Below are positions 16,879 through 59,200 of a stretch of 64,000 bases of DNA, piece by piece (positions within the stretch are counted from its first letter, which is position 1; each line of letters opens with the position of its first letter). The notes beneath the pieces are model-generated. The model was not told where the DNA came from. It worked only from the letters and a program-made list of their open reading frames with translations, and searched no databases. Location of the stretch: assembly GCA_002269645.1 (NCBI GenBank), contig NIVC01003278.1, positions 43,534-107,533 on the forward strand, written 5' to 3'. The stretch comes from Macrostomum lignano. Lineage: Eukaryota. Position numbers and translations under genes: made by a program.

Positions 16879-16911
<33 letters not shown>

Positions 16912-17722
16912 GCTTTTTTCGAAGTCCGGAGGAGGCTGCACTCCATCTGGATTCAGGAAGGTGGTTGTTAAAGACTGAAGGTTTATAATTTAGTTTTTGA
17001 ATATTCAAGTGTAACAATGTTTGGGAGAGTTTTATAAATAAAAACTGAGCGTCTAACAAACAAATTTTAAAGCTGATCAAAGCAACTGAAAATCGAATTA
17101 ATTTAAACTGATTTCGCATTTATTACGTGCATAGATTGCATGAATTCGTAGAAACAATCATTTTATGCATCAGAACTCACATTCGAGCTTTAAAAGCTGC
17201 GGGCCTCAACTCTTCACTGCTAGTCGAACTTGAGGAACTACTCAGCTGTCTCTGCTGCTGCTGCCGATCGCCTTCGGAGTGGCTTTCGCTGTCCGATGAC
17301 TGCGGAGATCCGCAGCTTCCGGTTCTGTCACGTGGCGCAGCTTTCGGACCGGAAGTTCTAGAAATCGCCGACGAAGTCATCGCTGGCAGGATGGCTGGCT
17401 GACTGCCGCTGCTGCTGCCGCAACCTCCAGTTGGAGATTCCGCGTACGTTGGGCTCGATGCATAACTGGCTTCGTCTTCGTTGAATTGTCGTCTTGAGTA
17501 AGAAGACGGAGAAGACGATGCGGCTAGAGCTAGAAAAGGATCGCCTCGATGGTCTAGAGGCGTTCGCCCAGTCTGAGCGTAGGTCTGTGAGGCTGAGCTA
17601 GTCTTTGTAGTCTTTTGTGCTTGCACCTGATGAGCTGACGAATTTTCGCCGACGGCGTAAAGATTTATTACAGATGGGAAATTTCCATGCTCAATTGATG
17701 ATTCCGAGCTGCTCTGATACAT
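2451..17722 (-). CDS. Otopetrin-family proton channel, spliced, 3'-partial. Exons: 17722-17181 (tentative), ~16974/16946-16666, 13523-13253, 10451-10334, 7723-7522, 2617-2451; continues beyond window start
   Basis: Joined translation QEAFK/ASLANILSGIYCILLCCLGLLIP..FSFE/AFYIYLFVTAIGFMACVYALL..GGLYLRLGAI/VFGIASMIRDG..LSILFTFVQLNFLFFMNAK matches the otopetrin TM1-TM4 pattern (LSxxYxxLL, FYxYL, YLRLGAxxFGxxSMI, FxFxQxxF). GT-AG sites with matching phases (1,2,0,1) from 16666 to 2451. The junction between the two most 5' exons is unresolved. Confidence 0.85.
2833..3350. repeat. Minisatellite, 11-bp unit TATCGTGTGAC
   Basis: Tandem copies visible. Confidence 0.95.
4303..4835. repeat. Minisatellite, 34-35-bp unit (CTCTTCACTTGCCACTCTCTGTGATACCCAATGA and variant)
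   Basis: Tandem copies; a block of a 35-bp variant (TAGTTCCCGACTTTG) sits in the middle. Confidence 0.95.
5322..5932. repeat. Minisatellite, 49/50-bp unit
   Basis: CTTCAGTCACTCTACTGGCCAAGCCACCTCATTGTCACTCTCCTTCATT repeated ~12x; source of spurious ORFs in three frames. Confidence 0.95.
6372..7458. repeat. Minisatellite, ~24-bp unit built on a GATTA pentamer (GAGACTAATGAGTAGATTAGATTA)
   Basis: Tandem copies with variable pentamer number. Confidence 0.95.
7815..8610. repeat. Polypurine/polypyrimidine minisatellite, 14-bp unit AGGGTAGGAGAGAG
   Basis: Almost purine-only on + strand; source of spurious LSYP/LSPT ORFs. Confidence 0.95.
9110..9830. repeat. Compound minisatellite: 20-bp GTTTGTGTGAAGATTTCAAG array, short (GT)n, then 27-bp ATTTTGGGATTGTGTGAATACGCTCGT array
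   Basis: Tandem copies visible; units share a TTGTGTGAA core. Confidence 0.9.
10525..10725. repeat. Minisatellite, 20-bp unit GCTAATCTATAGAATGGATT
   Basis: ~10 near-identical copies. Confidence 0.95.
11028..12210. repeat. Minisatellite, 24-bp unit GAGTTTACTATTGTGTTTATCAAT with 288-bp higher-order period
   Basis: Identical 80-aa spurious translations start 288 bp apart (11048, 11336). Confidence 0.95.
12785..13228. repeat. Minisatellite, 23-bp unit AAAGACACCCGAATCGACGCCCT
   Basis: Tandem copies ending ~25 bp from the otopetrin donor at 13253. Confidence 0.95.
13654..13890. repeat. Minisatellite, 16-17-bp unit GGGATATTTTGAGTAT
   Basis: Tandem copies visible. Confidence 0.9.
14714..15200. 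repeat. Minisatellite, 51-bp unit
   Basis: GTGACTGATGCAGGTGAATAAGTCACTGCAATGACTTTGATAGCCACATTA x ~9.5. Confidence 0.95.
16366..16616. repeat. Minisatellite, perfect 22-bp unit GTGTCAGAGGGCCTTAAAATCC
   Basis: ~11 identical copies, ~50 bp from the otopetrin donor at 16666. Confidence 0.95.
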
Positions 17723-30100: not shown

Positions 30101-33100
30101 GTCAGGTCTTTCTTATCAAGCTTCAATAATGAGCAAACCTCAACCGACGGACATTGTCAGCTAGTCTCTCGAGCATTCCGTCATCATCCCGACGCCGTCA
30201 GCTCCTTCAGCAGATTACACCAGGGACTATGGACAGCCTGATAAGAATTTCTCTAGTTTTGCCGATCAAGCCTCGATAGTGGGCAAAAATCAACTGCTGG
30301 ACATCCTCAGCTAGTCAGTCAAGCATTTAGCCATCACCCTGACGCCGTCGGCACCTTCAACAGGTGGCGACTTGATTCTTGTTTGAGAAGGTGCGCAACA
30401 AGAAGTTAGCCCGTGTTCTTGAATTTCGTGTGCCTGCGTTGCTCCGTTCCGGCGCAGCAAAAAAAATTGTCAGGGGGGGGGAAATTTTTCCCCCCCTCTT
30501 GGTAGTTCGACGGGCGGAAAAATGGCTTGGTATTCCTACTGTTAATAGAGACATACATGTAGAGGTTCAAGGGAGATACATACAAATACTGTTATAGGTA
30601 TTAAAATCAAAACGGAATTTATTAAAACAAATACATGCATGTATTACCTGCTAATAATTTGATGCCAATTATTATTTGGATTCATTGAGTAAAGAATCTA
30701 CATGCAATACTTAACAAAAACATATTACACTGCAAGTACTTTAAATACGAGAGTTCAAGTGAGTTGCTAGCCCATTATTCAACTCAGTTGCATACTATAA
30801 AATCTAACATTGTTGTTGTTTTATCGCGGAAGCAACTTTAGAAAGCTATGTGAAAATATCCAGTATGAGTATTATAATTCCATGAATTGAAAAAATAGCT
30901 ATGGTCCAATATTATCCATTATCAAGCCGCGCACAAAAGGCAAAATGATGGAAGACATTTTAAAATAAATGACTGTCTTTTAGAAAATTAATTCGCCGAA
31001 TTTTTCCGAGTATCAGTCAGTTTGGTTTAACAGACGGACGGCAGCAAATACGAGACAGAAAAATTAAACAAATGTACTGCTGCCGTCGAACTACTAAGAT
31101 TAATACATTATGCGAATTTAAAAAAACCCGCTAAGTATTTTTGTTAAAAAAGACTTAAAAACAAGGACTCTTTAGACTTGGTTTAACAAAATTGCTTGCG
31201 AGAATAGTTTCTTACTAAATCCTAATGGCGACAGCACTGCATTGGGTCTAAAGCAGACAATTTGATAATGAGAGAATTGCAGCATTTTTAGTAGTTAAAA
31301 ATCTTACACTTCTCTCGATTGTCGGGTGGTCAACTGACCTCTCTAGAAGACCCCACTGAGCCTGCAAAATTGATGGGGTCTGCTGAATCTGGTTTATCGA
31401 CCCTAATTTTGCTTACAGTTTTTAAACAAGCAAAAACGCAGAACTAAAATAATCAATATCGTCAAGGCTACTCAAAATCTACTCAGTCTTTTTGTCCTCA
31501 CTTGCCGCTAGCGCAGACCCAACAGTCGTAGACGCTTTGGCCCCAGTCTGCGAATCAACCTTCGATCTGGGCGGAGCCGGCAGCACAAAAGTGGCCGCCA
31601 ATGCAACAAACACAACAATGTGTCCGGTCCACATCATTGTGCCATGGTAGTAGGACAATACCAAGTTGAGGTGCAGCAGAGTGAACGGCACCACAATGTA
31701 AGCCAGGATTAGTTGCGTACAGAACCAAGTGATAACGTGGTACAATAGCAGCTGATTGGCTGCCAAAAATCGCGGTCTGAAAATCCTGCGAATCCGTCTG
31801 GCGGCAACCGTGGTCGGCACAGCGAACAGGAATGTGAAATAATAGCCGGGATAAAATCCATGCCACATTGCCGACAATACAAATGTGCCAATCATTTTAA
31901 ACTTTGGCGGCAGTCGACTGTAAGCTAGCAGTCTTAACCACGCGTTCGTTGAAGTGTTCCACGCGTCGATGTAGGACCGCATCGATGTGGCCGTTTCGAG
32001 ACCCATGATGCTGACATTTTTTATGCCGGTCCAGTCCTCTTTCTGTCGGTCGTAGCCGTACCCAGCAGCCAGTTGAATACAGCTGCCCAGATTCCAGGCG
32101 AAATAGTACTTCAATCTAGCCACCATCATCACCAGGTAGGTTAGAAATACGCGAACTAGGAATGGCCGTTGTTGAGCATAGCCCAACAGCGTGTCTGGCT
32201 GCCACCTTGGCGCCAGCACAAGCATCAAAGAAACCAGCACCAGAGTCAGTAGCATGTGCCGCACTAGAGCTCTCTTGCGTCCTCTGGCTTTGAAATTGAG
32301 CGGCTGCTCCTCCATGAAGTGAATGTACTCAGAGTAGAAGGAAATCGGGCCAACAACAACTCCGTGAAAGAAGAACACAAATGAAGCCAACTGAAGCAGG
32401 GTTGGCTTCTTCTCGACCATGAGTCTTTGATTCTCCTCTGGCAGTCGGTCGCGATCTTTGCGCGAATAGTCGTGCAAGCTGAAGGCCAGTGCAGTCAGCT
32501 TCTGGGTGCTGATCATCACGGGCGCGGTGAAGTCCACGGTGCCCAGATCCTTCTGCATAATTCGTTTCACCTGCACAGGTTATGGGGAGGTTCCGGAGTG
32601 GGTTTTCGTCCAACTGCATCAAAACGTTTTACAGGTTCAAAGAAAAGAAAATCCAAGCAAATACTTCTGAAGTCAAAGGACCTAACACTTTGATTCGATA
32701 TGGCCTTTAAAAATTCGAAGTTCATGCCTAGGAGCAAGCAGTTCAATACTGAATGGGAGAATCAAGCTATTGAATACTTGCTTTTCATTGTCTATGGCCC
32801 ATCAGGGGGTCTGTGGAGCAGTCAATCTGGGAATTTCGGAGCGCAATTAATCCTTTCCACTGCTGTGCCAGCCTCAGACCATAGACAATAGCAGACGTCA
32901 TCAGACAAACAAACGGCAGACAAGGAATTTTAGCGAGAAGCCGAGAGCAGTGACGCAAAGTTTTGCTACATGTACAACTCAAGATGCCACAGAATATTGC
33001 AAGATAAGCAACGGAAAGTGCACGACCGGATTGTCGCTGCGATCGAAATTAATTGCCAATTTTAATTTCGTTATACAATCTGTTTGCAGACGTTGTTTCA

Positions 33101-36437: not shown

Positions 36438-37014
36438 GAGAGATCAACTCCCGCCAGGTAATGTATAGTTTAGCTAGATTTTTTGAAGTCGAAAGACACA
36501 GAGAAGACTATACTCTTGTTTTTGCTTTTATCTGGAATTTTATACACTTCAGATCCAGCATTTTTCCAGTGCTTACTAAGGAGATTAGGGTGCCATATGT
36601 CTTAATCTCTTATCTCTTGCTTGGGGTGTGTCTACTTAACTCTCTCTCTCTCTCTCTCTCTCTCGCTCTCTCTATACTGGCATGGCGTGCACAAAATAAA
36701 CCTATTGGAATTTGAAAGCGAGGCGCCGCTGGCATGCTATTGAAAGATCGAATATCTGAGTATATTATCATAAAACCTAGTATGGTGTGGTCTTGTCCGC
36801 TTAAGTATACTTGTACATGGTATGGCTCGGTTTGTTTGCACTTAAAAGTTTGCGCGTGACCGAAGCAGCTGCAAAAATAAGAGGGTGTGAGAGCTACAGT
36901 GGAAGACTTGCAAGAGTCAATTTTGCTTGCAAGCGATTTGGCTTCCCATTGTAAAATCACACTTTCTGTCTGGTACGTACATGTCATAGGCCGGTGCTCC
37001 TGTCTCTTGGTGGG

Positions 37015-37790
37015 CGCCCCTGTCTCTTGGTGGGCGCCCCTGTCTCTTGGTGGGCACCTCTGTCTCTTGGTGGGCGCCCCTGTCTCTTGGTAGGCGCCCC
37101 TGTCTCTTGGTGGGCGCCCCTGTCTCTTGGGTGGGTGCCAATGTCTCTTGTGGGCGCCTGTCTCTTGGTGGGCGCCCCTGTCTCTTGGGTGGGTGCCAAT
37201 GTCTCTTGGGTAGGTGCCAATGTCTCTTGGTGGTCGCCCCTGTCTCTTGGTTGGGCAACAATGTCTCTTGGTGGGTGCCCTATCTATTGGTGGGTGCCCC
37301 CGTCTCTTGGTCTTGGGTGGGTGCCTTGTCTCTTGGTGGGCGCCAATGTCTCTTGGGTGGGTGCCTTGTCTCTTGGGTGGGTGCCTTGTCTCTTGGTGGG
37401 CGCCATATCTCTTAGATTGGCGCCCCTGTCTCTTGATGGGCGCCCCTGTCTCTTGGTGGGCGCCAATGTCTCTTGGGTGGGTGCCTTGTCTCTTGGTGGG
37501 CGCCCCATCTCTTAGATTGGCGCCCCTGTCTCTTGATGGGCGCCCCTGTCTCTTGGTTGGGCAACAATGTCTCTCGGTGGGCGCCCCTATCTATTGGTGG
37601 GTGCCCCCGTCTCTTGGGTGTGCACCAATGTCTCTTGGTGAGCGCCCTTGTCTCTTGATGGGCACTAATGTCTCTTGGCTGGGTGCCTTGTCTCTTGGTG
37701 GGCGCCCCTGTCTTTTGGGTGGGCGCCACTGTCTGTTAGGTGAGTGCTACTGTTTTTTAGGTGGGCGCCACTGTCTCTTGGTGAGCGGCC
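37015..37790. repeat. GC-rich minisatellite, ~20-bp unit CCCCTGTCTCTTGGTGGGCG
   Basis: Tandem copies, source of several spurious ORFs. Confidence 0.95.
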
Positions 37791-38482
37791 CTTAATTCCG
37801 TGTCTCTTAGGCCTGTGGTTTCCACGTCCAAGAGGTTGCATGAGCTCTCGTCATACGTCGAGCTTGGTTTGTCTCTCGTCTCGTCGTGCTTTAGTTTTAG
37901 GAGGAACGCAGTTTTTGTGGGGAGATTTGAGGGTCCCTAGTCCTCTAGATCCATAATTATAGCTAGCTACATTACATGTATACAACAACAACAACACAAC
38001 AACAACAAAATACATTGTCAGCCAGTCAAGCGTGGGACAATGTCACATGGCACGTTTAAAGGCCTGGGCGCGAACGTAGGCCGCACCGCCGGTAGTGTCC
38101 GGGGCACCAGCATCAGCCAGCAGGCAGTCGACGAAACGCCAATATTACATGTATACAAAAGTATACTATATCTCCGGCTCATTGTTAGTGGTACGAGTAT
38201 CTATAGCTCCTTTACTTCTGCACTTTAATTCTGTCGTTACTGCATGGCTATAATCAATGCTCACACACAGTGGCAAAGAGGCTATAACCACGCATACATT
38301 TATAGGTAGCTATGTATATAGTATTGTTTTTGACAATCTAAATGATAATTTGGACATTAAAAATGAGAAACGCATACAGCGAGCTGCAGCAGCTTGCTGG
38401 CAAACTGGTATTGGCCATAGAGTCCGTGGACAATCTAATCGATGAAAAGCCATTCTAAATGAGAATTTGGACATTCAAAATA

Positions 38483-43911: not shown

Positions 43912-45432
43912 TCAATTCAGACTGGGAGCGTTAACTTTGAAGATGCTGACAGCATTTCCACCCTTTTGACAAATTGCAAGCATTGGCACGTCGGCGTCAA
44001 GTACATCAAGGCCGTAAGGATCGGCCATGGCAGTAGAATCGTCTGGCATTCCAACGGTTTGCAGAACTTCTCCATCTTGTTTAAATACTCGAACCAGATT
44101 CTTAATGCTTTGACTAACAAATATGAGACCTGACTGGTGAGCAACAACATCAGCAGGGGTCGGAAGTTCATATGTTGCGATAAGCCGTCCGCTAATAGTG
44201 CAAATTTTGAGTACATGATTTGCATTCCAATCTGTCACCAGGATTGAGTTGCCAAGTGGTGATAAACCTTCATAAATCACACCTGCACACTCAGAATACA
44301 TTCCTGCCAGATTAATTTTGCTTATGAACCGGGTATCACTTTTCGACCAACATAAAATACTGATGCTCTTTTGCTCCAAGAGGTAAATTTTTTCGCTGCA
44401 ACCGCCAATCGCTAAAAACTTGTAGTCCGAATCGCTCGATTTTATAACATTTCGAATGTAACCATTTAAATCTGCAACAGTTACGCGGTCGGGCTGTCCC
44501 AGAAACAGCGCTTGGCGTTTGCTGTCGCAATGAATTCCAATAGAACGTATTGACCAATCAATGTCGCAGTTGACAGTAAGCCTAACAGATCCATCGAGCG
44601 AACACAAAAGGATATGGTCTTTCTTTGAGTCCACATGGAACATTACAAAAACGCACTTTGCTGGAACTTCTGCACCGCTGCCTGAAGAAGAGCCTACTTT
44701 TACTAATCGACCTGCTGAATCAGAAGTAAAACCTTCCGTGTTTGTGCAGGCAGCGACCCACTGAGGCTTGCCATCGAGCTCCAGAATCTCAGAGTGAAGC
44801 TCGCAGATCTCTTTCTCAATTACAGTTGTGTTAGCGACCTCGCAGCGCTGCACCACTTCTCTCATTTGCCTGTCAACCAGCAGAAGCAAGTCTCGCAGAC
44901 TGCCGCTCACATCACCTACAATTCTCCGAGCATCATCAATGCCCTCTGCAGTCTCTTCTGCATCAGCCTCTTCCAGCTTGTCTTCCAAGTCAGTGCATTT
45001 CAGCTCCATCTCAGAGCTGAGTTCAAAAACTTTTCTCAAGTCGTTGGCGCTCTCAGCTGCATCAACTGCGCTATCGTACTCCTGCAGCACAGAAAACTCA
45101 GTCAAATTTTCTAGAGCACCGTCGTGTCTCTCAGTCAGTCGTGTTGTCACTGATGTTCTCCACTTTGTCAACAAGTCGAAAGCTTCATCAAGCAGGTCGT
45201 CAGCAGCCTGAAGCTCGGCAGCCAGGGTCTGCTGGTAAGTTCTTAGCTGGTCTCTCTTAGCTTTCATAGGCGCCAGTTTGTTTTGCACAGATCTCTGCAG
45301 CTCTCGCACTTTTTGTCTGTCCTGATCAAGGTGCTTCTGGCACAGAGGCTGGGGGATGCGACCACCGCAACCCGAGACGGGGGCGCCGCAGCCTCTGATG
45401 AAGCACGCATCGGAAGTCGAGGCCTCAGACAT
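43912..45432 (-). CDS. Paralog A: intronless Cx4Cx15Cx2H finger, coiled coil, NHL-like beta-propeller (RING-less TRIM-NHL-like), ~506 aa
   Basis: MSEASTSDACFIRGCGAPVSGCGGRIPQPLCQKH; helical K/E/L/Q-rich segment; NHL-type blades PADVVAHQSGLIFVSQSIKNLVRVF and DPYGLDV. Confidence 0.85.
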   Translation of the reverse strand: MSEASTSDACFIRGCGAPVSGCGGRIPQPLCQKHLDQDRQKVRELQRSVQNKLAPMKAKRDQLRTYQQTLAAELQAADDLLDEAFDLLTKWRTSVTTRLTERHDGALENLTEFSVLQEYDSAVDAAESANDLRKVFELSSEMELKCTDLEDKLEEADAEETAEGIDDARRIVGDVSGSLRDLLLLVDRQMREVVQRCEVANTTVIEKEICELHSEILELDGKPQWVAACTNTEGFTSDSAGRLVKVGSSSGSGAEVPAKCVFVMFHVDSKKDHILLCSLDGSVRLTVNCDIDWSIRSIGIHCDSKRQALFLGQPDRVTVADLNGYIRNVIKSSDSDYKFLAIGGCSEKIYLLEQKSISILCWSKSDTRFISKINLAGMYSECAGVIYEGLSPLGNSILVTDWNANHVLKICTISGRLIATYELPTPADVVAHQSGLIFVSQSIKNLVRVFKQDGEVLQTVGMPDDSTAMADPYGLDVLDADVPMLAICQKGGNAVSIFKVNAPSLN

Positions 45433-46369
45433 GGGAGCGCAACTGCAAGTTGAGATGCACAATAGTTAACTGCATGTGGTGTGTATATATTTAACAATGT
45501 AAATGCACCACGTCTACGAGTGTATAGATTTGATTACGATTATGTCGTTGGGTTTTCATCATCAATGCTTTGAGTTAAATATCTCCGGAAAAAATATGAA
45601 CCATAAAACACATCAAACAAAAAGTTAAGTTCGGTAAATGCGAGCTACATAATAAAGAAGGCCATATGCTATCTATCAAAACCGGAGGAGCATTGAAGCT
45701 ACTGGATACGAATAACCAATAAAGACGCTAAACTCGTGTAAATGTAAGTGGTTTTGTATCAATCAAGGTTTCAACGTACTATATTTCACTGCAAAAAAAG
45801 TTTTCGGTTGGTAAGAAACAGTAATACAAATACAAGAAAGTAATATAAATATACCGTTATAATATTTATTTCGTACAGATCATACAAAAAACGCGAGACA
45901 GTTTGTTGCCCAAAAACCGATTGCTGAGAAAATTCACAATCCGTTGCAACAAAAGTAGCTTTAAAGTTGACAGTCGAAAAAAATCGCTGTAAAATTGACA
46001 TCGCAAAGTAAGAAAAAAGCACCTGTTAAATACCTGGTAAATTCTTTGAATGACGTAGCATATGGATGTACAATCATAAGAACACAGCCAATGAAGTAGT
46101 AATCGAGTTTTTATAATATGTACTAAGGAAGTATTGCAATGTAAGTACATACAAAATTTAAGTCTAGAGTTGACTGAAAACAGTAAAAAAAGCTTGCTGA
46201 GAGTTTTGTCCTTCAGTTTTTTTTTCAAGCCGCCACCACCCAGAGGTAAACGCCACTGTATTTTTGTAAAGCTAAGTTTATACTTAAAATCGATATCTAG
46301 TTGTGCCTTCTTATGCACTACTTATGTCACTATATTATTATGATACATCATAATACTGCAGAAAAACTG

Positions 46370-46495
46370 CAGACTTGAAATGGCAACTGACGAATTTTAG
46401 GCACAGAACCAGCAACTCCAGATTCGCTTTTGACGAGGGTCAATTAAACAGGTTTGTCTAGTTTTCACTGCGGCAGCGCAGCCTCTGATGTAGCA
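46370..46495 (-). pseudogene. N-terminal relic of a further paralog
   Basis: Minus strand CYIRGCAAAV (46495-46466) and later KIRQL; nucleotide GCAGCCTCTGATG shared with paralog A; no in-frame ATG, stop follows. Confidence 0.6.
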
Positions 46496-47995
46496 AGCAA
46501 TTCATCCTGGTTGCCGAAAGTTGACTGAAATAAAAAAAATCGGCTGGGTGTATACGTGACGGTTATTGAATATTACCTACCTACTTATGAATATTATGTG
46601 ATACTATGAATATTATTATATAGGTAATACTATGAATATTACCTACTGAATATTACCTACCTACTCATTGAATATTACCTATATATATCAAAGAATATAA
46701 AATCTATGGTCTAAATGAAAATAAACAACGCTCTTAAATCTGAGTGCCAGGCATGGAGGAAAGAATAGAATGGAGTGCTAATCTGAGCCAGCTATTTTCG
46801 TCCCACTCGATCTTCACCTTTAGTATCCCTTCCCCCCCGTTCCTTCCTATTGGCTCGTGACTGCCATAGACAAAGTCGTTTCGTTTTCGCCCCCCTCTGA
46901 AAGGTATGTCCCAGCATAGTACGAGCTCACATCAAAATATGCTTACAGCCAATGGGAGCCATAGTGCCAGTTCGTTCGGTCGGAATGAGAAGAACTTTAA
47001 ATAATTGATTGCATATTTATTCCTAGCGATAGCACCAAAAGTATTTGTTTCATATATTTTTAGTTTACGGACTAAAGCCAAAGCTCAGGCGGAACGCGAA
47101 AATCGTTAAAAATCTACGTCGGCATTATACATAAACTATAAATATCATCTGGTCTGAAGTTGCCAACCACTGTGCGAAGAGAGTTTAAGTTAGAGGCGTC
47201 TTTGGTCTCTACCGTAGACGATTCTGAGAAAGGGAAATTGATTTGGTCGCCTGCACTTGGAGCTGAGCGCAAAGTGAATTAGCAAAAACTAAATAAAATC
47301 AGTAGAAGTGCCTGGAGTAAAAAAACCCATAAAGATACTCGTATAACGGTGTAAACAATCGCTTGTTCCAGCAAAGTCTTAATTTAACAATCTTAGACTT
47401 GGAGCTTTGCTTTGTTAATCAAAATTAACAATCAATAAGAAGTAGTCCAAATCTGATCTGTCGTGAAAAAACAACTCAAAACATCAGTACCGTTTTGAGT
47501 TTTGGAAAGATCTACCAATAGTTACTGTAAAAAAGATAATAATTCAATTAGGCACGCGGGTTAAGTCTAAGAAGAACGTGATAAAAATGTTTTCTATTAA
47601 AAATAAAGCACATAGCAATAACATCACCAGTTTCAGCTATTGGCAGAAACAAATTCAAACTACTATAAGTAATACAAACAGGAGCGCACACGTAAAATCA
47701 ACAAAATATATTCAAAAGGTAATTTGGAATTTATCGGAATTATTTTGTTAACAAGATGACGGCAATATTAAAGATCAGTAAGATTCACAAAAAAGTGATT
47801 TAACTATCAGGAGGGACATTGGGTCAATTAGACGCAACAAATCGTGAAAATGCTGACAGCCTTGCGTTTTTCTTGACAGACGGCTAGCATCGGAGGGTCG
47901 CCTTCCACGACTGCGAGGCCATATGGGTCAAACTTGTAACCACTATCAGTGCTACCAGAACCTTCTTCATGATCTTTGCTACTATTGCTACTGTC

Positions 47996-48164
47996 TTCTT
48001 CTTCTTCAGTCCTTTTCTCGCCTCGCGGCGTGGACGCTCTGCCGCCGACTCACTGGCAGGTCTTTCGATGTCTGGCCATGTTCGTGCGGGCCAGCATCCT
48101 CCCGCAGTCCGGGCACGGAGCTCTGGCGCTCTTGTAGATCCGCGCCGTAATCCCCGTCGTCATC
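47996..48164 (-). mobile_element. 5'-truncated non-LTR retroelement fragment (169 bp), 11-bp TSD, (GAA)4 tail
   Basis: TTGCTACTGTC at 47985-47995 and 48165-48175; insert encodes MTTGITARIYKSARAPCPDCGRMLARTNMARHRKTCQ*, 42-nt UTR, GAAGAAGAAGAA. Confidence 0.8.
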
Positions 48165-49618
48165 TTGCTACTGTCATCTCCTTCACTTTCGTTCTCGTCA
48201 TCTTCAGAAGCGAATTGAAGAGTCTGCAAAATGGTTCCGTCATTCAACAGGACATAAACTGAATCGGACAGACTCCGGCTAACAAAGACCAATCCGGATG
48301 AATGAACCGCAACATCGGCAGGAAATTCGAAATCGGCGGGCTCGCTCAAATCAGTGGGATACGATACTACGAGTTGGTGACTCACAATGCAAATCTTATG
48401 CAGCTGATCTGAAGCCCAATCGGTCATTAAAATGAAGTGGCCAAAAGCAGACAGACCTTCATAAAGTACACCGCTATTAGTTGGGTAGTACTTCGATACG
48501 TCAATGACAGACTGCAATTGCTCGCCATCCTTTGCCAGACAAAAAATGCTGGAATTTTTCTGCTCCAAAAGAAACAATTTGTCCGAATTTCCGGTCATAC
48601 CGACGAATTTGCATTCAGAAAGACCTAAGCTTTGGGCGTAGACGGCATGAGTTATAGAGCCACTCAGATCTGCCACAGTCACAACGCTAGACTGTGCGAT
48701 ATACAAACTTTGCCTATCGCTGTCACACTGAAGTCCAACAGCTTCCACAGACCAATCGATAGCACAGTTGACAGCTAGTCGCAATGTTCCATCAATTGAT
48801 GTGGCAAGAATATGGTCCATACCAGAGTTAACATGAAAAACTACAAACAAGCACTGAGATGTAAGGCTAATAGGCTTACTAACGACAGTTGATGCCTTCA
48901 CCAAGTTGCCTTCTGAGTTTCCAACGTATCCGTTGGTGTTGCTGCAAACTGCAATCCATTGTGGCGCACCTTCAAGCTCTAGAATTTCGCAATGAAGCTG
49001 ACACAGCTCTTTCTCTTCCGTTTGGCTCGGAGTCTCTTTTGTTTCGCAGAGTCTTGAAATTTCTTTCATTTTCACTTCATTTAGCAAGCGAAGATCCCTC
49101 AAGCCACCGCTAACATCGCCAACAACTCTGGCATCGCAATTTACTTTCTCGTTGGCTTCAAGCTTCTCTTCTAGGTCAGTGCACTTTAGCTCCATTTCAG
49201 AAGTGAGTTCAAACACCTTTCTAGTGTTTTCATCACCCTCCGCTGCAGCAATTGCACTCTCATATTCCTGCAGCATTGAAAACTCTCCTAAATTTTGCAA
49301 AGCATTGTCGTGCCTTTCAGTCAACAGAGTAGTGACAGCTGACCTCCGCTTTACCCACGAGTCCAAAGCTTCATCAAACAGATCCTCTACAGCCTGCAGC
49401 TCAACAGCCAGAGTTTGCTGACGAATCCTAATCTTGTCCCGCTCGGCAAGCATCGGCTCTAACCTAGCCTTCATCGAAATTCGTAATTCTCTAACTTTCT
49501 CTCTGTCCTGGGCCAGGTGCCTTTCACAGAGTGGCTGAGGAATCCGACCACCAAAACCGGATGCGGGGTTGACGCAACCTCGAATGAAGCACTGGTCGGA
49601 AGCAGATTGCTCAGACAT
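48050..49618 (-). CDS. Paralog B (522 aa) whose native C-terminus is displaced by an in-frame insertion; orphaned native tail at 47995-47828
   Basis: CFIRGCVNPASGFGGRIPQPLCERH, PADVAVHSSGLVFVS; same frame beyond TGA reads DSSNSSKD..FDPYGLAVVEGDPPMLAVCQEKRKAVSIFTICCV*, homologous to the paralog A tail. Confidence 0.85.
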   Translation of the reverse strand: MSEQSASDQCFIRGCVNPASGFGGRIPQPLCERHLAQDREKVRELRISMKARLEPMLAERDKIRIRQQTLAVELQAVEDLFDEALDSWVKRRSAVTTLLTERHDNALQNLGEFSMLQEYESAIAAAEGDENTRKVFELTSEMELKCTDLEEKLEANEKVNCDARVVGDVSGGLRDLRLLNEVKMKEISRLCETKETPSQTEEKELCQLHCEILELEGAPQWIAVCSNTNGYVGNSEGNLVKASTVVSKPISLTSQCLFVVFHVNSGMDHILATSIDGTLRLAVNCAIDWSVEAVGLQCDSDRQSLYIAQSSVVTVADLSGSITHAVYAQSLGLSECKFVGMTGNSDKLFLLEQKNSSIFCLAKDGEQLQSVIDVSKYYPTNSGVLYEGLSAFGHFILMTDWASDQLHKICIVSHQLVVSYPTDLSEPADFEFPADVAVHSSGLVFVSRSLSDSVYVLLNDGTILQTLQFASEDDENESEGDDSSKMTTGITARIYKSARAPCPDCGRMLARTNMARHRKTCQ

Positions 49619-50855
49619 AGATGCAGCATGAATTCAATATTGGTGGTATTCAGTTTAACGTAAATTCTTGTTGCGGAGAAATATTGTTTTCAGATGAGAT
49701 AGTGGCAGAAATTATCCAATTCTGAACACTCCAGTTACAATAACTCCTCTTAAAAGTACGTATCTAACGAGGCGAAAGAGTCTAAGGTAATCGCGTCTCG
49801 CTTCACAATCCATCACGAACAAACGATTTGGCGCTTGTAAATAAAAAAAATTACCGGTGCAATTCTGCGGCTTTGCATATTCCAAAAAATGTCTTTGAAA
49901 CGAAAGGTTGTAAAAAGGGACAAATAGTAGAGCGACTATTTGGGCTATTGAGTTCGTTTGAAGTTCGTTTGAATCTCTAACGACAATGACATGCTTTATA
50001 TTAGAGCTCGCTACATAATTAGAAACTAAACAAATCAAATGCAATTCTTTTAATGTCCAAAATAAATTAAAACTTTGGCATATATTTTTTGTTTAAAACA
50101 AAAAAGACAAACGGTACAGCTGTAAGAATTTAGCTATAAAGACACGGCGACGCCAAGTGGATTTACAATTGCCAGTAATTCCTAAAGAGGGGTTTATTAA
50201 GCTCTTCGGTTTGACAGAAACTACGTGTTAAAGCTTTAAAATAATAATAATTAATAAACAAGTTTTCACTGAAATGCCACTGCAATGTACTAGCATATTA
50301 CTGCCACAGCAAAGTAGAAACTAAATTTTCATTCAGTTGCAAATTATACAGACTTCCATAGTAATATGCAGACTTAGACAGACATGTAAAAATGCTTAAG
50401 TCTTGGATTCAGGTTTGAGTGCCATTGCATTTCTCTTAAAAAATTATAGTGCATGTAATTTATTGTAGATTTCTTATTCTTTAGTTATGCTGGAGTCAAT
50501 AATGAAAAAACGGAGATTTTTTATTTGAAGCGTAAAATCAAAGCAAAGTAAAATGACAGTTCACTGCATAAATAACAATGATACTTGAATAAAAACTACC
50601 TGAACTTTTAATTTAGCTTACAAACAAAATTGTAAAAGTAAGTAATTCAACCTAAAATTAACAATAATATGAGAAAATGCAAGTCAAATTTAACTTGAGA
50701 ATGGAAAAAAAACGTGTAGGCCGAATACAACGAACCAAAACCTCGAATTATGGAAAAAATAAAAAGCTAATGCGTGCAAAAACCTGGAACCAAAAAACAA
50801 CTATATAATTTGACTTGTAAGACGCGTCGGTCAGTCGTCGCACAATGTATAGAAA

Positions 50856-52397
50856 TCACTCGCAGTCAATGCGAATGCGGTAAACGCTGATGCTATTTCC
50901 TATTCGCTGGGACACTAGTAGCAAATCGGGTTTGCCATCAACGATGGTAAGCCGGCACGGCTTGTTCATGGGCTCATTAATTGGGCCAAAAATACTGATT
51001 GTTCCGAGGCTCTGCAACAGAAACCCGTCGTTTCTTAGGACGCGCACCATATGCTTTGAACGCTCGCTGACAAATATGAGGCCAGAGCGGTGAGCCGCAA
51101 CACCGGACGGGTCTGCGATGGTTTTTAGCGCGGTTTCTTTGCTTGGATACGATACGATTACATGACCGCTCGCGATGCAGACTTTATGTAGCAACTTAGC
51201 GTTCCAATCGGTCAGTAGCAAGGCGTTGTCTAGCACAGCCATGCTCTCAATGTGAGTACCATAGTGAGAAATACCTTTGATTGAAATAACGGACTGGACC
51301 CTACCACTGCCTTTGTCGATGCAAAACACTTGCTTGCTCTGCTCACACTGCTGTAAAGCAAATATCTTGTCCGTATTGCAGGTCATCCCGATTAGCTGGC
51401 ACTGCTGGCCAAAGTTGCTAGAGTCAACGAAACGCATCGCTTTACCGCTAAGATCTGTCATCCGTACTGAATCGGACTGAGCAACAAAGAGAGCCTGCCG
51501 TTTGCTATCGCAGCAAAGTCCGACAATTGGCTTGGACCAGTCGATATTGCTGTACACTTTTAGTCGGATAGATCCATCTATTGAGCATGCCGAAAAATGA
51601 TCAACTTTTGATGTTGAATGGAATGCAACAAAAATGCACGGCTCAGGAATGGGAACAACAATGTCATCTGCAGCCGGATCCGCCTTGATAACTCGATTCA
51701 ATGTGTCAGCGGTGAAACCTTTCGTATTGCTGCAAGATGTCACGTGAGTAGGAGAGCCCTCTAGATTAGCAATTTTGCACTGGAACTCACAGATGGAAGT
51801 CTCTTTAGAGGGCATACCTCCAGGCTCGCAAAGCTGCATCGTGTAACTCATTTGTCGGCTAATTGACAGCTGCAGATCTCTAAGGCTACCGCTAATGTCA
51901 CCAACGATTCTCTGAGCACAGTTTTGGTTATTATTGTCGAGCTCAATTTGCTCTTCCAGGTCGCTAGATTCAAGATCCATCGCGGCAGTTAGGTCAAAAA
52001 CTTTCCTAACGTCATTGTTATTCTCAGCTTCAGTGACGGCGCTTTTAAACTGTTGCAGTATGGAGAACTTGCTCAGCTTCTGCAGCACACTGTTGTGCTT
52101 TGTAGTTAGTCGGTCTAGAATAACAGTTTTCCACTTTGTCAGCAAAGCCAATACAGACTCGAACAGTTCCTCGGACTCTTCCAGTTCTGCAGCAAGGGCC
52201 TGTTGCTGCAATCGAAGAACGTTTCTGTGAGCCAGGAAAGTTTTCAGCTTATTAAGCACAGATTTGTGAAACTCTTGCACTCTCTGCTTGTCCTGTTCAA
52301 GATGCCTCTCACACAACGGATGCGGTATTCTTGCGCCAGTGCCCGAGACGGGAGCGACGCAGCCTCGGATGTAGCATTCTGGATCTGTGCCGCTCAT
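50856..52397 (-). CDS. Paralog C: Cx4Cx15Cx2H finger, coiled coil, NHL-like propeller, ~513 aa
   Basis: MSGTDPECYIRGCVAPVSGTGARIPHPLCERH; DPSGVAAHRSGLIFVSERSKHMVRVL. Confidence 0.85.
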   Translation of the reverse strand: MSGTDPECYIRGCVAPVSGTGARIPHPLCERHLEQDKQRVQEFHKSVLNKLKTFLAHRNVLRLQQQALAAELEESEELFESVLALLTKWKTVILDRLTTKHNSVLQKLSKFSILQQFKSAVTEAENNNDVRKVFDLTAAMDLESSDLEEQIELDNNNQNCAQRIVGDISGSLRDLQLSISRQMSYTMQLCEPGGMPSKETSICEFQCKIANLEGSPTHVTSCSNTKGFTADTLNRVIKADPAADDIVVPIPEPCIFVAFHSTSKVDHFSACSIDGSIRLKVYSNIDWSKPIVGLCCDSKRQALFVAQSDSVRMTDLSGKAMRFVDSSNFGQQCQLIGMTCNTDKIFALQQCEQSKQVFCIDKGSGRVQSVISIKGISHYGTHIESMAVLDNALLLTDWNAKLLHKVCIASGHVIVSYPSKETALKTIADPSGVAAHRSGLIFVSERSKHMVRVLRNDGFLLQSLGTISIFGPINEPMNKPCRLTIVDGKPDLLLVSQRIGNSISVYRIRIDCE

Positions 52398-54674
52398 TTT
52401 GCTGCAAGATACATGCAAATGCAATGTATTGATTGACAAGATAATAATATATATCAGGCATTTATCTAAGATGAGATAGGTAACCTAATTAGCTGAATGT
52501 ACCAGCATCTAAATTTTACAGTTTTTTGTGATTGAAGAAAAAAATTAAATAAAAAATATTTTACTCTATCTACCATCTGACCTCACAAACTTACATACGT
52601 CACAGGACCTAGATAAACACGAAAAAATAAAGGATACAAAAATGACTCATTTGAGTGTTTTACACTCATTGTAATAGAAACTCCTGCGATCAAGAAACAT
52701 GATTGTATAAATTATTAAAGATCCACATTAAAATAAAGCCACCAATATTTTCGAGAAAAGATTTGTATCCTTAATTTTGAGGCATTTAAATAATCAAAAG
52801 ACATAAGAAGTATACGAGATGCCGAATAAACGTCAAAAATGAATTTCAATCGAAAACAAAATCATGCAATCGCGTAAAAGTTGCTATTCAATAAAAATAG
52901 CGGCAATTTATTAAAAGTAACTTGTTAATATACGGACTCAATCGGTACATGCCTATCGACTATATTCCTAGAACTGTTCCGGCAACACGAGCACGCTGCC
53001 GTAACTCACTACGTACCGTCGTTACTCGATACTCACATTGCCGGCCGTGGCGCGTTTCAACTTATTAACTTTAATTTTATTAATGATCCAACATTGTAAA
53101 CAGCCTAATGACAACAGAATGACAGTTGAATAATTAGTTATTTCAACACATTTGACGCAATGTTATGCTTCTTTCCGTGGCTTGTAAATGACGTCATGGA
53201 CCATAGAACATTGCTTCGTTACAACGCACAGGTGATAACTGATAACGCAATTATGTTATAATTGCATATCTTTTTTTAATTTGTATGAATAAATCAAGTC
53301 TTAAGGCTTTTTGCTTTAAAGAAAAACTTTTTGTGCAACTCGCCGCCGCATAACCGATTATGATTTTGAGTAATCTGTAACTGTACAAACTTAAAGTATA
53401 GTTATGCTTTTGCACTCTGAATTTGTAGTACGGGTCAAAATTGTCACTCAAGCAGAAGTGTTTTTTGTTAAATTGTTTATTTATATTTAGTTTTTAGTTA
53501 AAATATTGTTAAAAGCAACACTCTGTTATTGCTATTATTAAGTAAACAGTTATATAGATAACAGTTGTGAAACGGTTAGTTTTTTGCATTTCGCATAGGA
53601 CTTGCAGCAGTATATAAACCGTAACAGTTATTCTCTACTCCTAAAAAACAAGTCCAAGATGTATAAACACAAAACGAAATTCCTTATATACGTAAGTAAA
53701 TCGTTTTGTTTTAACTGGGGTTCTAAAGTGCTGGTGTCTCGAAGCTTGCTGTAATATACAGAAATAAAAATAAGTACAACGTTCTGAGAGCCAGTATTTT
53801 TGTAGAAATTTCTCACTTTTTCTTCAAATTTCGAAACTTCAATTTCTATTTGTCAACCTGGAAACACAGCTATCCTAGGACTATCAATTTATTGAAATCT
53901 AAAAAGAAATAAAAAACGATTTGTTTGCGAAATCTGCAATTAAAGAAACGATTGAGATCAAAATGTCATTCCTATTAGTGCAAATTTATATTTATTAAAT
54001 CGAATATGCACGGAAAATGATCAATATCTGCAAACATCTGCCGGAATGTCAACTATGTTGTGACAGGCTATGCTCATTATTTACTAGTAAAAGCACAGCG
54101 GCAGCTGTAGTATATCAGCAAGCACAGCCTTTTGAGGAATTAAAACAGTCAATATAGCTTTGAAAACATGGAAATCGATTCCAGCATCACTAATAATTTG
54201 AAGTAGAGAAACAAAGGCGAAAAAGCGATGTAAATTTAATCCAAACGCAGAACTGAGCAAAGCATATTAGGAAATTATAGAGAAACATTCAATCTCAGCT
54301 TGATAATATAGCACGGTTAAAAGTTACAACTACTCAAAACACGTGGAACTATAATTTTATTATGAAACATACAAAAATGAAAATGCTGCTTGCCTAATTC
54401 GTTCACTCATCTCGACAATCATGCAGTAGCTACCACAGATACTAGAACAACTAGATTTGTCGCTCGCAATCGCAATTTATGTTGTGAATAAGTCTACTTG
54501 TTTTCAGTAGTTTGTCTGCGCAGTTTCTTTTAAATTAAATGTGGCAGCTGACACCGGGGTTTGCCGCCTCAGGAGCATATTGGGTGAATAATGAACAAAA
54601 AGCATTAAACTCGATGTACACAAGTGAACGCAAGACGGACAAAACTCTGCCTAGGGAGCAGGCTCAATCTAGCT

Positions 54675-56295: not shown

Positions 56296-59200
56296 CTACT
56301 CCAGAGCAGGAGGAAACAGGCGCTCTTCAACGTATTTCAATTGCCACACTTTCCCTGCCAATCGCTGGAATCTCTCCGGCCCCATTATGTCGCGCAGAGC
56401 GTCTTCGACGTCGTCTGGATCGCGCGAAGCGTCGTCAAGAACTTCGTAGCAACGTCGCAACAGTTGCAGACCGAGCTGTTGAAGACAGTCGCGCCTCAGC
56501 TGCACCATACGGTCGCGCATTCGTCCAGTACGGCCCAGGGTCTCCTCTTTAGACTCGATCGGTCCGCATTCGCTGTCGTCGGCTTCGTTGTCAACCTCCG
56601 TCGGGTTTGACGCTGACGCCAAGTCCGATGCCGCCGCCGCTCCAGACCTCGGCGAAGCTGCCGCAGCAGCCGCGGCCACAGTCAGAGTCTGGTTCATGTG
56701 CTCCACTAAATCGGCCATCTCCGCCGCCTGCTGCTGCTCGCGATCGCCTGAATTGCTTCGGCTGCCACCGCCGCCGCCGCCGCCGCCGCTAGAGCCGTTT
56801 CTATCGGCGGTTTTATCAGACACTGGCGATTGAGATTTCTTCTGTCTCTTCTGCCGCTTCTCTGAGGCATCCGCCTCGTGCTCGCTGCTGTCTCTGCCGG
56901 CATCGTTGCCGACTGCCGCCGCCGCTGGCACGGAAGCTTTCGGCGAATCGCGTGGCTGAAAATTAGCAAAAAAGAAATCGCTATTTATCTATTTTGGGGC
57001 TTGTAGCCTCGCGGTTAAGAGCGTCGAACTCACGACTGAAAAGGACCCACTCGGAACAGTTTGTAGTCCTTGAGCAAGGCACTTCAACTCTGCATTGCTT
57101 CAGTTCACCCAGCTGTAAAATGGGTGCCAGCATTAGCTGGGGTAATTGAAGGTGTGTGGCGACCCCCCCATCCTTGGGCTGAACAGCTGTACCCAGTCTT
57201 TAAAGTACCTAAAGCGGTACCTAGGTAAAAAAGCGCCCCAGAGTTGTTGCAGGGAACACGGGTAAAACAGGAACGACTCTAAAACGACGAGATGTCAGAG
57301 TAAAAATCGTTAAAGAGTCACTTTAAAAAGTAAATTTGAAGCGTCTGTCTGTCTGCCACTCTGAAACGACTTTGGGGCGCTTCTACACTGAATCTGGGGG
57401 CCGTATAGTCCCCCATATAGAGTTAGAACCGCATTTTGAATTTATAACAACAGCTTTATTTACTCTACTTGAGTTAGTAGAAATTTCAGCGCTAACACGA
57501 TTCGCTAACTCAAACAACTTCTAATGTACAAAACTTCAAACAACTCACTGAAAGTCTCGGATTGGCCGTCTTTGGTCTCATTTGCTTCTGTTTGAGCACT
57601 AGCGACTGCAGATTAGAATACTGTTCAGAGTTGGTAAATGCTGAAATTTACAAATATGTGCCATTGAATTAGATTTTCATGCATCAGATTCTATGGAGAT
57701 TTTTATGTACAGATTCTAGGGAGGTTATCATACAGATTTTAGGGAGATTTTCATGTACAGATTCTAGGGAGATTATCATGTACAGATTCAAGGGGTATAC
57801 TCATGTACAGATTCAAGGGGTATAATCATGTGCAGATTCAAGGGAGATTATCATGTACAGATTCAAGGGTATAATCATGTACAGATTCAAGGGAGATTAT
57901 CATGTACAGATTCAAGGGGTATACTCATGTACAGATTCAAGGGGTATAATAATGTACAGATTCTAGGGAGATTATCATGTACAGATTCAAGGGGTATACT
58001 CATGTACAGATTCAAGGGGTATAATCATGTGCAGATTCAAGGGAGATTATCATGTACAGATTCTAGGGAGATTATCATGTACAGATTCAAGGGGTATACT
58101 CATGTACAGATTCAAGGGGTATAATCATGTGCAGATTCAAGGGAGATTATCATGTACAGATTCTAGGGAGATTATCATGTACAGATTCAAGGGGTATACT
58201 CATGTACAGATTCAAGGGGTATAATAATGTACAGATTCTAGGGAGATTATCATATACAGATTCAAGGGGTATACTCATGTACAGATTCAAGGGGTATAAT
58301 CATGTACAGATTTTAGGGAGATTATCATGTACAGATTCAAGGGGTATACTCATGTACAGATTCAAGGGGTATAATCATGTGCAGATTCAAGGGAGATTAT
58401 CATGTACAGATTCAAGGGTATAATCATGTACAGATTCTAGGGAGATTTTCATGTACAGATTCAAGGGGTATAATCATGTACAGATTCAAGGGGTATAATC
58501 ATGTACAGATTCAAGGGAGATTATCATGTACAGATTCAAGGGGTATAATCATATACAGATTCAAGGGAGATTATCATGTACAGATTCAAGGGGTATAATC
58601 ATGTACAGATTCAAGGGAGATTTTCATGTACAGATTCAAGAGAGATTATCATGTACAGATTCAAGGGTATAATAATGTGCAGATTCAAGGGAGACTATCA
58701 TGTAAAAAAACATGTTAAATTGCGACTCACCTGGCGAATTGAGCCCCAAATGTTCGCGACGCCTTCGACGAGCGGCCGTGTTAACTCTGGGCGAAGCTTC
58801 AACAACAGCTTTTACCGCGGATGGTGTCGCTGCTGCCGCAGCCGCAGCCGCCGCAGACTCCGGCACAGCCTCAGCCTCGAGCTCCGAAGCTACCGACGAA
58901 GATTTTGGCAACTTCGGCGCTGGCGCCGTAGTCGATGGCGCCGAGGTGCACGACGAGGAGGAATTTCGTCTAGACGATGGAGACGAAAACGGAGGCATGG
59001 AAGGTTGCGGAGCCGGCGCTGCCGATGTCGGCGGTCGAGGAGGCCGTCGGACATGCTCCTGCTGGTGCTGCTGTCGTTGAAGTTGTTGCGCCGAAGATGG
59101 CGAAGGCGGCAACGGCTGCCGGCTGGCGCTGTTTGGCGCGGTGCCAGGACGTCGCGTACTTTCTAGGAATAGTTGAATACTCCGCCGAATGAACGGATCG

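What the first reader, a model, noticed from the sequence alone, without database searches (positions are those of the whole stretch)
47828..48175. Retroelement 3' end inserted in frame gives paralog B a new C-terminal zinc finger and amputates its last propeller blade
A 169-bp GC-rich insert is bounded by an exact 11-bp direct repeat (GACAGTAGCAA on minus strand) and ends in (GAA)4, hallmarks of a 5'-truncated LINE. It reads in frame as MTTGITARIYKSARAPCPDCGRMLARTNMARHRKTCQ*, a CPxC..HxxxC finger like those ending ORF2 of some RTE-type LINEs (recalled, not searched). Removing insert plus one TSD restores DDSSNSSKD..FDPYGL..AVSIF, and that orphaned tail is still stop-free, so the event is recent or the insert is spliced out or read through. 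It is either an instant domain gain or a fresh knockout allele.
Basis: partly seen in the sequence, partly recalled or inferred. Interest (0 to 1): 0.7.

Follow-up and report, generated by a model that had tools for sequence, protein, structure and literature searches.

The report
Truncated LINE insertion in flatworm gene
A 169-base tail piece of a jumping gene (a LINE retrotransposon) recently landed inside one of three near-identical copies of a flatworm NHL-propeller gene; it cuts off the last propeller blade and adds a stray zinc finger, which is an ordinary kind of gene-breaking event.

Summary
The window is Macrostomum lignano contig NIVC01003278.1. On the minus strand, 169 bp (47996-48164; 63% GC against 40% in the flanks) sit between two exact copies of GACAGTAGCAA and end in (GAA)4. 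A second copy of the locus in the same assembly (NIVC01000358.1) has exactly the predicted empty site. A third annotated copy (PAA66511.1) reads straight through it as an intact 535-aa protein.

In frame with the host gene, the insert encodes 37 residues plus TGA. This peptide matches the extreme C-terminus of many ORF fragments, including M. lignano PAA53620.1, which carries a reverse-transcriptase domain, a LINE post-RT motif and four fingers. The insert is therefore the last ORF2 finger, stop, 54-nt 3'UTR and microsatellite tail of a LINE.

The host gene encodes a coiled coil plus a six-bladed NHL propeller, and the insertion removes the last three strands.

The most likely reading is a recent knockout of one redundant gene copy, not a domain gain. 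The parent element was not found, and the RTE clade assignment remains untested.

The parts
48165..48175 (-). Upstream copy of the 11-bp target-site duplication GACAGTAGCAA
   Evidence: The empty copy L001 has a single copy of this sequence.
47996..48164 (-). The 169-bp insert, the 3' end of a non-LTR (LINE) retrotransposon in sense orientation
   Evidence: It is 62.7% GC against 40.5% in the flanks. It is absent from L001 and from the protein of the third copy, P0147.
48053..48163 (-). The last 37 codons of the element's ORF2 (MTTGITARIYKSARAPCPDCGRMLARTNMARHRKTCQ). The C-x2-C-x11-H-x3-C finger lies at 48056-48115.
   Evidence: An HMMER search gave 136 hits. Of the 141 sequences examined, 38 end with the same finger within 12 aa of their C-terminus, and many share the AR.Y+ and TNMARH motifs. 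tblastn shows 57% identity over 30 aa to the C-terminus of the M. lignano RT-bearing protein P0146.
48050..48052 (-). TGA, the element's own ORF2 stop, now the stop of the chimeric gene B. It overlaps a GTGAGT hexamer at 48053-48048.
47996..48049 (-). The element's 54-nt 3'UTR, ending in (GAA)4 at 47996-48007
   Evidence: No significant RNA structure was found (z = -1.2).
47985..47995 (-). Downstream copy of the 11-bp target-site duplication
47828..47984 (-). Orphaned original C-terminus of gene B (NSSKDHEEG...AVSIFTICCV*). It forms the last three beta-strands of the propeller, is still open, and is in frame.
   Evidence: Its DNA is identical to L001 over this stretch. It aligns to strands 482-488, 494-499 and 504-510 of the paralog A model.
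48050..49618 (-). Chimeric ORF of paralog B: 522 aa, made of 484 host residues, a junction Lys and 37 LINE residues
43912..45462 (-). Paralog A (intact), with a coiled coil and a six-bladed NHL propeller
50856..52439 (-). Paralog C (intact)
   Evidence: with a weak Pfam NHL hit.

Best explanation
**Event.** A non-LTR (LINE) retrotransposon RNA was copied into the chromosome by target-primed reverse transcription, at a staggered break in the coding sequence of paralog B. Reverse transcription started at the (GAA)n tail and stopped after 169 nt. Only the last 37 codons of ORF2, its TGA stop and a 54-nt 3'UTR were inserted, flanked by an 11-bp target-site duplication.

**Why it looks designed.** The piece landed in sense orientation and happens to be in frame. 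Translation of gene B therefore runs from the host acidic loop (...EGDDSS) into the LINE's last C2HC finger and ends at the LINE's own stop.

**Effect on the protein.** The last 53 residues of the host protein are no longer translated. They form three of the four strands of the sixth blade of an NHL beta-propeller, the blade that closes the ring.

**Timing and copy number.** The event is recent and confined to one of three about 98%-identical copies of the locus in the M. lignano DV1 assembly. One of the other copies encodes the intact 535-aa protein.

**Most likely consequence.** This is loss of function of one redundant copy, not a working domain gain.

**Shown versus inferred.**
- Shown: the insertion, the TSD, the empty sites, the ORF2-tail homology, and the position relative to the propeller.
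- Inferred: the TPRT mechanism, and the loss of function.
For: - **Filled and empty sites.** The pair has exact breakpoints and a single TSD copy in L001.
- **Third copy.** P0147 (PAA66511.1) reads ...EGDDSSNSSKDHEEG...AVSIFTICCV without interruption.
- **Assembly redundancy.** The window and L001 are different contigs of the same assembly, GCA_002269645.1. That assembly is documented to hold 180 Mb of duplicated blocks at 95% identity or more, because the DV1 line has extra large chromosomes (PMC5730564).
- **Insert features.** There is a GC step at both junctions and a (GAA)4 tail.
- **ORF2-tail homology.**
  - The peptide hits 136 proteins at E<=1e-3 among 1.84 billion representatives.
  - Of the 141 sequences examined, 38 end with the same finger at their extreme C-terminus.
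  - Longer members carry the LINE post-RT motif (RIGHV.RM).
  - M. lignano P0146 combines Pfam RVT_1 (E = 1.3e-14), that motif, four fingers and the same kind of ending.
- **Literature.** RTE-type LINEs are described with TSDs of 6-12 bp, short 3'UTRs that include (GAA)n, and frequent copies reduced to the 3' coding end (PMC2887409).
- **Host structure.** The paralog A model has a propeller with pLDDT around 90. Its best PDB matches are the NHL domains of Thin, TRIM71, TRIM2/3 and Brat (TM 0.69-0.77). The site aligns to loop 471-481, just before the last three strands.
- **Selection on B.** B evolved under constraint similar to its neighbours before the event: dN/dS is 0.38, against 0.35 for A and 0.48 for C.
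Against: - **No parent or sister copy was found.**
  - There is no DNA match in the 155 kb of M. lignano sequence held.
  - No protein among 5.8 billion clusters shares three 5-mers with the peptide.
  - The closest M. lignano relative, P0146, is only about 57% identical over 30 aa.
- **The clade is unknown.**
- **No read-level check of the assembly was possible.**
- **There are no expression data for the junction.** The public gene model of this copy (PAA52243.1) stops 29 nt upstream of the TSD, after an internal 656-nt intron. It says nothing about the chimeric end.
- **Loss of function is inferred from the fold, not measured.**
Confidence: 0.87

Rival explanations
1. The 169 bp is a complete copy of a short non-autonomous (SINE-like) element built from a LINE 3' end and mobilised in trans. 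It would then not be a randomly 5'-truncated LINE copy.
For: The two cases look identical at a single site. No longer copy was found. The literature notes that truncated RTE copies and SINEs are easily confused (PMC2887409).
Against: The insert starts in the middle of an ORF2 coding stretch that stays in frame and is homologous up to its first residues (the AR.Y+ motif). It has no tRNA- or 5S-like head, and Rfam gave no match in the window.
Confidence: 0.08
2. The chimera is a working new protein. Either the 5-bladed NHL domain plus LINE finger functions as it is, or the TGA is bypassed. Bypass could happen by read-through, or by splicing from the GTGAGT that overlaps the stop to an in-frame AG. 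Either route would give an internal finger insertion with the last blade kept.
For: Insert plus TSD is 180 nt, so the frame is kept and a single stop separates the two parts. GTGAGT at 48053-48048 is a consensus donor, and in-frame AGs lie 42-201 nt downstream, for example TTCTGGTAG|C at 102 nt. The gene does use a GT..AG intron elsewhere in the public model.
Against: The candidate acceptors lie in purine-rich sequence without a pyrimidine tract. UGA followed by G is not a known leaky context (general knowledge). No predicted protein in the large collection carries the peptide. The insert is present in one of three copies only, and the lone finger is one of four in its native array.
Confidence: 0.04
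3. The insert is ancestral, and the other copies lost it by precise deletion between the two 11-bp repeats.
For: Recombination between short direct repeats can delete the interval exactly.
Against: This would have to happen in two copies. Paralogs A and C and three more distant family members have no trace of the insert. The TSDs are still identical.
Confidence: 0.02
4. The insert is an assembly artefact in a PacBio/Canu contig.
For: The assembly is highly repetitive and redundant. The sister copy has a possible homopolymer error.
Against: A misjoin does not create an exact 11-bp duplication of the target around a foreign segment that ends in a LINE ORF2 tail, stop, UTR and microsatellite.
Confidence: 0.02

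Closest known systems
5'-truncated RTE-type LINE copies (for example lepidopteran RTEs; PMC2887409)
   Same: [quoted passage not shown] TSDs are about 6-12 bp, and insertions occur within coding sequences.
   Different: RTE membership rests on RT phylogeny, and the insert has no RT domain. I did not find the four-finger C2H2/C2HC tail of the relatives described for RTE in the papers I read.
M. lignano LINE ORF2 fragment PAA53620.1 (P0146) and its unnamed relatives in ENA and Logan contigs
   Same: The C-terminal architecture is the same: RT, then the post-RT motif RIGHV.RM, then four fingers, ending in AR.Y+..C..CG..L..TNMARH.+.C plus 1-10 residues.
   Different: It belongs to a different family, with about 57% identity over 30 aa and no DNA similarity. 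It is not the parent.
Disease- or polymorphism-causing L1 insertions into exons (general knowledge)
   Same: TPRT insertion of a short 5'-truncated copy with a TSD truncates a coding sequence. The insertion is present on some copies of the locus and absent from others.
   Different: The tail is a (GAA)n microsatellite rather than poly(A). The insert is read in frame for 37 codons and uses the element's own stop.
TRIM-NHL proteins (Thin/TRIM32, TRIM71/LIN-41, TRIM2/3, Brat), as the host gene family
   Same: A coiled coil is followed by a six-bladed NHL propeller. Foldseek TM is 0.69-0.77 against the NHL domains.
   Different: Pfam detects no RING or B-box, only a short conserved Cys/His motif at the N-terminus. 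Sequence identity to the solved NHL domains is 10-18%. Sequence search found relatives only in M. lignano.

Membership tests
Non-LTR (LINE) retrotransposon insertion, 5'-truncated | Target-site duplication flanking the insert, with a matching empty site | tested here: met
   There is an exact 11-bp TSD. The empty site is seen in L001 at DNA level and in P0147 at protein level.
Non-LTR (LINE) retrotransposon insertion, 5'-truncated | 3' end is poly(A) or a simple-repeat tail, with no terminal inverted or long terminal repeats | tested here: met
   (GAA)4 lies at 47996-48007. The two ends of the insert show no repeat relation.
Non-LTR (LINE) retrotransposon insertion, 5'-truncated | Coding similarity to the 3' end of a LINE ORF2 that carries a reverse transcriptase | tested here: met
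   HMMER hits have E-values down to 1e-11. Of the 141 sequences examined, 38 end with the same finger. P0146 combines RVT_1 with this tail.
Non-LTR (LINE) retrotransposon insertion, 5'-truncated | Longer or full-length copies sharing this 3' end exist in the same genome | not testable with these tools
   No tool searches the M. lignano genome by DNA. Nothing was found in the 155 kb held or in the protein collection.
RTE clade of LINEs | Placement of the RT domain within the RTE clade by phylogeny, with a single ORF carrying an APE endonuclease and RT | not testable with these tools
   The insert has no RT domain. P0146 is a partial ORF, and no reference set of LINE clades was available.
RTE clade of LINEs | Short 3'UTR ending in a di- or trinucleotide repeat, and TSDs of roughly 6-12 bp | tested here: met
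   The UTR is 54 nt with (GAA)4 and the TSD is 11 bp. This matches the description in PMC2887409. The feature is not exclusive to RTE.
C2H2-like zinc finger | Four metal ligands with classical spacing and a fold or profile match | tested here: inconclusive
   The C-x2-C-x11-H-x3-C ligands are present. Pfam gives only sub-threshold hits for the lone peptide. The sister fingers in P0146 and P0054 do pass zf-C2H2 and match solved C2H2 arrays. The chimeric-protein model was too poor to use.
NHL-repeat six-bladed beta-propeller (host gene) | Six four-stranded blades, and a structural match to solved NHL domains | tested here: met
   The paralog A model has a propeller with pLDDT around 90. Its top 15 Foldseek hits are NHL domains, with E-values down to 2e-13. 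Pfam NHL is only sub-threshold, and only on paralog C.

The most novel reading that the evidence does not exclude
The LINE fragment may have been exonised. The GTGAGT that overlaps the LINE's stop codon could act as a splice donor to an in-frame AG 42-201 nt downstream, or the single TGA could be read through. Paralog B would then carry a LINE-derived C2HC finger inserted into the loop before an intact sixth NHL blade. That would be a one-step gain of a nucleic-acid-binding finger by a TRIM-NHL-like protein, caught while still present in only one of the gene's copies.
Probability: 0.04. Interest if true: 0.6.

Novelty: new member of a known kind. Interest (0 to 1): 0.27.

Why it matters
- **A clean example.** The filled and empty sites sit in one genome assembly, which makes this a clear case of a LINE fragment truncating a coding sequence while donating its own last codons and stop.
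- **Recent LINE activity.** It shows that a LINE family was active recently in the M. lignano DV1 lineage. That family has a microsatellite tail and relatives with a four-finger ORF2 C-terminus.
- **Use as a marker.** The insertion can tell apart the redundant copies of this locus in the aneuploid DV1 line.
- **Annotation.** It helps explain why the public gene model of this copy is partial.
- **Limits.** It does not open a new question. Exon disruption and chimeric ends caused by retroelements are well known.

Tried and rejected
- **Wrong-frame query (my mistake).** queried the protein collection with the wrong reading frame of the insert.
- **Search for the parent or a second copy.** blastn and tblastn of the insert against the window and five M. 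lignano loci (155 kb) found only the insert itself.
- **Source organisms of the closest tails.** All but the M. lignano cluster are unnamed ENA or Logan contigs.
- **Clade assignment from the literature.** Nothing I read describes this finger tail.
- **RNA structure of the insert and its 3'UTR.** It is not better than shuffles (z = -1.8 and -1.2), so no 3' stem-loop is claimed.
- **Structure of the chimeric protein.** Predicted from a single sequence, it gave pLDDT 42 and is unusable.
- **Rfam on the window.** No match.
- **Long-standing pseudogene.** Rejected, because dN/dS for B is like that of A and C.
- **TSD as evidence on its own.** Rejected, because about 3 such pairs are expected by chance per 24 kb.
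- **DNA of P0146 and P0147.** I did not fetch it, because the look-up tool is restricted to other classes of protein.
Full report
**1. What the window is.**
- A protein search with paralog B returned only Macrostomum lignano proteins.
- The window lies on contig NIVC01003278.1 (107,533 bp) of assembly GCA_002269645.1, Mlig_3_7, from the DV1 line.
- Three intronless-looking paralogs lie head to tail on the minus strand: A (45462-43912), B (49618-48050) and C (52439-50856).

**2. The observation.**
- The minus strand reads ...GGAGAT GACAGTAGCAA [169 bp] GACAGTAGCAA TAGTAGC....
- The 11-mer occurs only at these two places in the window.
- The 169 bp are 62.7% GC, against 40.5% in the flanks, with the step at both junctions. 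They end in (GAA)4.
- The ORF reads into the insert as K-MTTGITARIYKSARAPCPDCGRMLARTNMARHRKTCQ-stop.
- Joining the flanks gives a 536-aa ORF.
- Insert plus one repeat is 180 nt, so the orphaned tail remains in frame behind a single TGA.
- An 11-bp repeat at this spacing is not rare by chance: about 3 are expected per 24 kb of shuffled sequence. The repeat alone therefore proves nothing.

**3. The empty site.**
- The protein most similar to B (P0001, 96% identical) lies on another contig of the same assembly, NIVC01000358.1. I fetched it as L001.
- L001 holds the same C-B-A gene order at about 98% nucleotide identity.
- At the site it has a single GACAGTAGCAA and no insert. In the 650 bp around the site, the two copies otherwise differ by one substitution and one T4-to-T3 homopolymer deletion.
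- That deletion shifts the frame of the L001 copy after residue 395. It may be a sequencing error.
- The same 90% cluster holds a third copy, PAA66511.1 (P0147, 535 aa, on a 269-kb contig). It reads ...EGDDSSNSSKDHEEG...AVSIFTICCV without interruption.
- The published description of Mlig_3_7 reports 180 Mb of duplicated blocks at 95% identity or more, attributed to the extra large chromosomes of DV1 (PMC5730564). Several copies of a locus are therefore expected.
- The insertion is thus real and specific to one copy. It is also young, because the TSDs are identical and the flanks nearly so.

**4. What the insert is.**
- Word-index searches of 5.8 billion protein clusters found nothing with the peptide. 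One search was my error: I used the wrong frame.
- A full HMMER scan of 1.84 billion representatives found 136 proteins at E<=1e-3.
- Some of these are ordinary multi-finger proteins. A coherent group consists of short ORF fragments that end with the same finger.
  - Of the 141 sequences examined, 38 have C-x2-C-x11-H-x3/4-C within 12 residues of their C-terminus.
  - Of those 38, 21 have TN[MLVI][AS][RK]H, and many also have the pre-finger AR.Y+ motif that the insert shares.
- The longer members (P0054, P0039, P0011, P0143, P0145, P0146) carry, upstream, three more C2H2/C2HC fingers and the motif RIGHV.RM, followed by a GRKRKT..YWK..L.EAG stretch. From general knowledge, this is the region that follows the RT domain in LINE ORF2 proteins.
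- P0146 is M. lignano PAA53620.1. Pfam finds RVT_1 at its residues 2-243 (E = 1.3e-14), then that motif, then four fingers, and it ends ...ARKYRRKTAECDKCGRTLSATNMARHKRTCGEA*.
- Its fingers match solved C2H2 arrays, including the N-terminal fingers of an R2 retrotransposon protein.
- The insert is therefore made of the last finger of a LINE ORF2, the element's own stop, a 54-nt 3'UTR and a microsatellite tail.
- P0146 is a relative, not the parent: it is 57% identical over 30 aa and shows no DNA match.
- I found no parent or sister copy in the 155 kb of M. lignano DNA available to me. No tool here searches that genome by DNA.
- The anatomy agrees with published descriptions of RTE elements: TSDs of 6-12 bp, short 3'UTRs with repeats such as (GAA)n, and frequent copies reduced to the 3' coding end (PMC2887409). 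These traits are not exclusive to RTE, and clade membership needs an RT phylogeny that I could not make.
- RNA folding gave no significant 3' structure.

**5. What it does to the host gene.**
- An AlphaFold2 model of intact paralog A, built on a seven-sequence alignment, has a long coiled coil (residues 42-207). It also has a beta-propeller (220-510) with pLDDT around 90.
- Its best PDB matches are the six-bladed NHL domains of Thin, TRIM71, TRIM2, TRIM3, NHL-2 and Brat, with TM 0.69-0.77 on the target.
- In the family alignment, the insertion site falls in a loop that is expanded and acidic in B. It corresponds to residues 471-481 of A.
- The three strands after the site (A 482-488, 494-499, 504-510) form one NHL repeat. 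It is the last one, and it closes the ring.
- The chimeric ORF loses these 53 residues and gains 38.
- A model of the chimera from a single sequence was unusable (pLDDT 42).
- Before the event, B was not decaying. Between the window and L001, dN/dS is 0.38 for B, 0.35 for A and 0.48 for C.

**6. Expression.**
- The public model for this copy (PAA52243.1, P0148, 254 aa) uses a canonical GT..AG intron of 656 nt inside the ORF (48879-48224). It ends at an out-of-frame TGA at 48206-48204, which is 29 nt before the TSD. It gives no information on the chimeric end.
- No predicted protein in the large collection contains the junction peptide.
- A GTGAGT overlaps the LINE's stop (48053-48048), and in-frame AGs follow at 42-201 nt. 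They lie in purine-rich sequence, so splicing there is only a possibility.

**7. Verdict.**
- The best explanation is a recent insertion of a 5'-truncated LINE by target-primed reverse transcription into one of three redundant copies of a coiled-coil/NHL gene. It produces a truncated chimeric ORF that most likely no longer folds into a closed propeller.
- Still open are the RTE label, the parent element and any function of the acquired finger.
- This is an ordinary kind of event, documented here unusually cleanly.

Noticed in passing
L001:11150-11200 (equivalent to window 48432-48429): The empty-site copy of paralog B on NIVC01000358.1 has a T4-to-T3 deletion that shifts the frame after residue 395. 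Its public protein, PAA84857.1, is accordingly a 395-aa 'partial'. This could be a real second, independent disruption or a PacBio homopolymer error.
   Followed up: partly
window 48224-48879 (minus strand): The public gene model of the window's copy of B (PAA52243.1, 254 aa) removes a canonical GTAAGC...TTTTGCAG intron of 656 nt from inside the ORF. This deletes most of the propeller and ends at an out-of-frame TGA at 48206-48204. It is either an alternative isoform or an annotation artefact from multi-mapping reads.
   Followed up: partly
window 48048-48053 (minus strand): A consensus 5' splice-site hexamer GTGAGT overlaps the LINE-derived TGA stop. In-frame AG dinucleotides lie 42, 63, 66, 72, 75, 102, 111 and 201 nt downstream.
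   Followed up: partly
window 24120-28448: A GC-rich (63-69%) LTR retrotransposon sits in a roughly 40% GC genome. Its LTRs of about 220 bp, at 24120-24338 and 28232-28448, are 93% identical. It has a 926-aa protease/RT/RNase H/integrase ORF at 25040-27820 (plus strand).
   Followed up: partly
window 1-17000, 29147-30363, 36999-37792, 57677-58704: There is a very high density of minisatellite arrays, with periods of 11-151 bp and up to 100 copies. Some show extreme GC skew, and many create long spurious ORFs. The 25-bp array at 57677-58704 lies next to the exons of a NEK-like kinase gene.
   Followed up: no
window 43912-52439 versus L001:7500-16400: Synonymous divergence between the two copies of the cluster is very uneven: dS is 0.082 for A, 0.033 for B and 0.0085 for C. 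P0147 is a mosaic of window-like and L001-like residues. This suggests gene conversion or recombination among the copies.
   Followed up: partly
paralogs A, B and C, and P0003-P0005: This coiled-coil plus NHL-propeller family has a conserved N-terminal C-x4-C-x15-C-x2-H motif, but Pfam detects no RING or B-box. Sequence search found it only in M. lignano, in tandem arrays on several contigs (L003, L004).
   Followed up: partly
P0146 (PAA53620.1), P0143, P0054, P0145: A LINE lineage has an ORF2 that ends in an array of four C2H2/C2HC fingers with a strongly conserved last finger (AR.Y+..C..CG..L..TNMARH.+.C). It is present in M. lignano and in many unnamed ENA and Logan contigs. I could not find it described in the papers I read.
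   Followed up: partly
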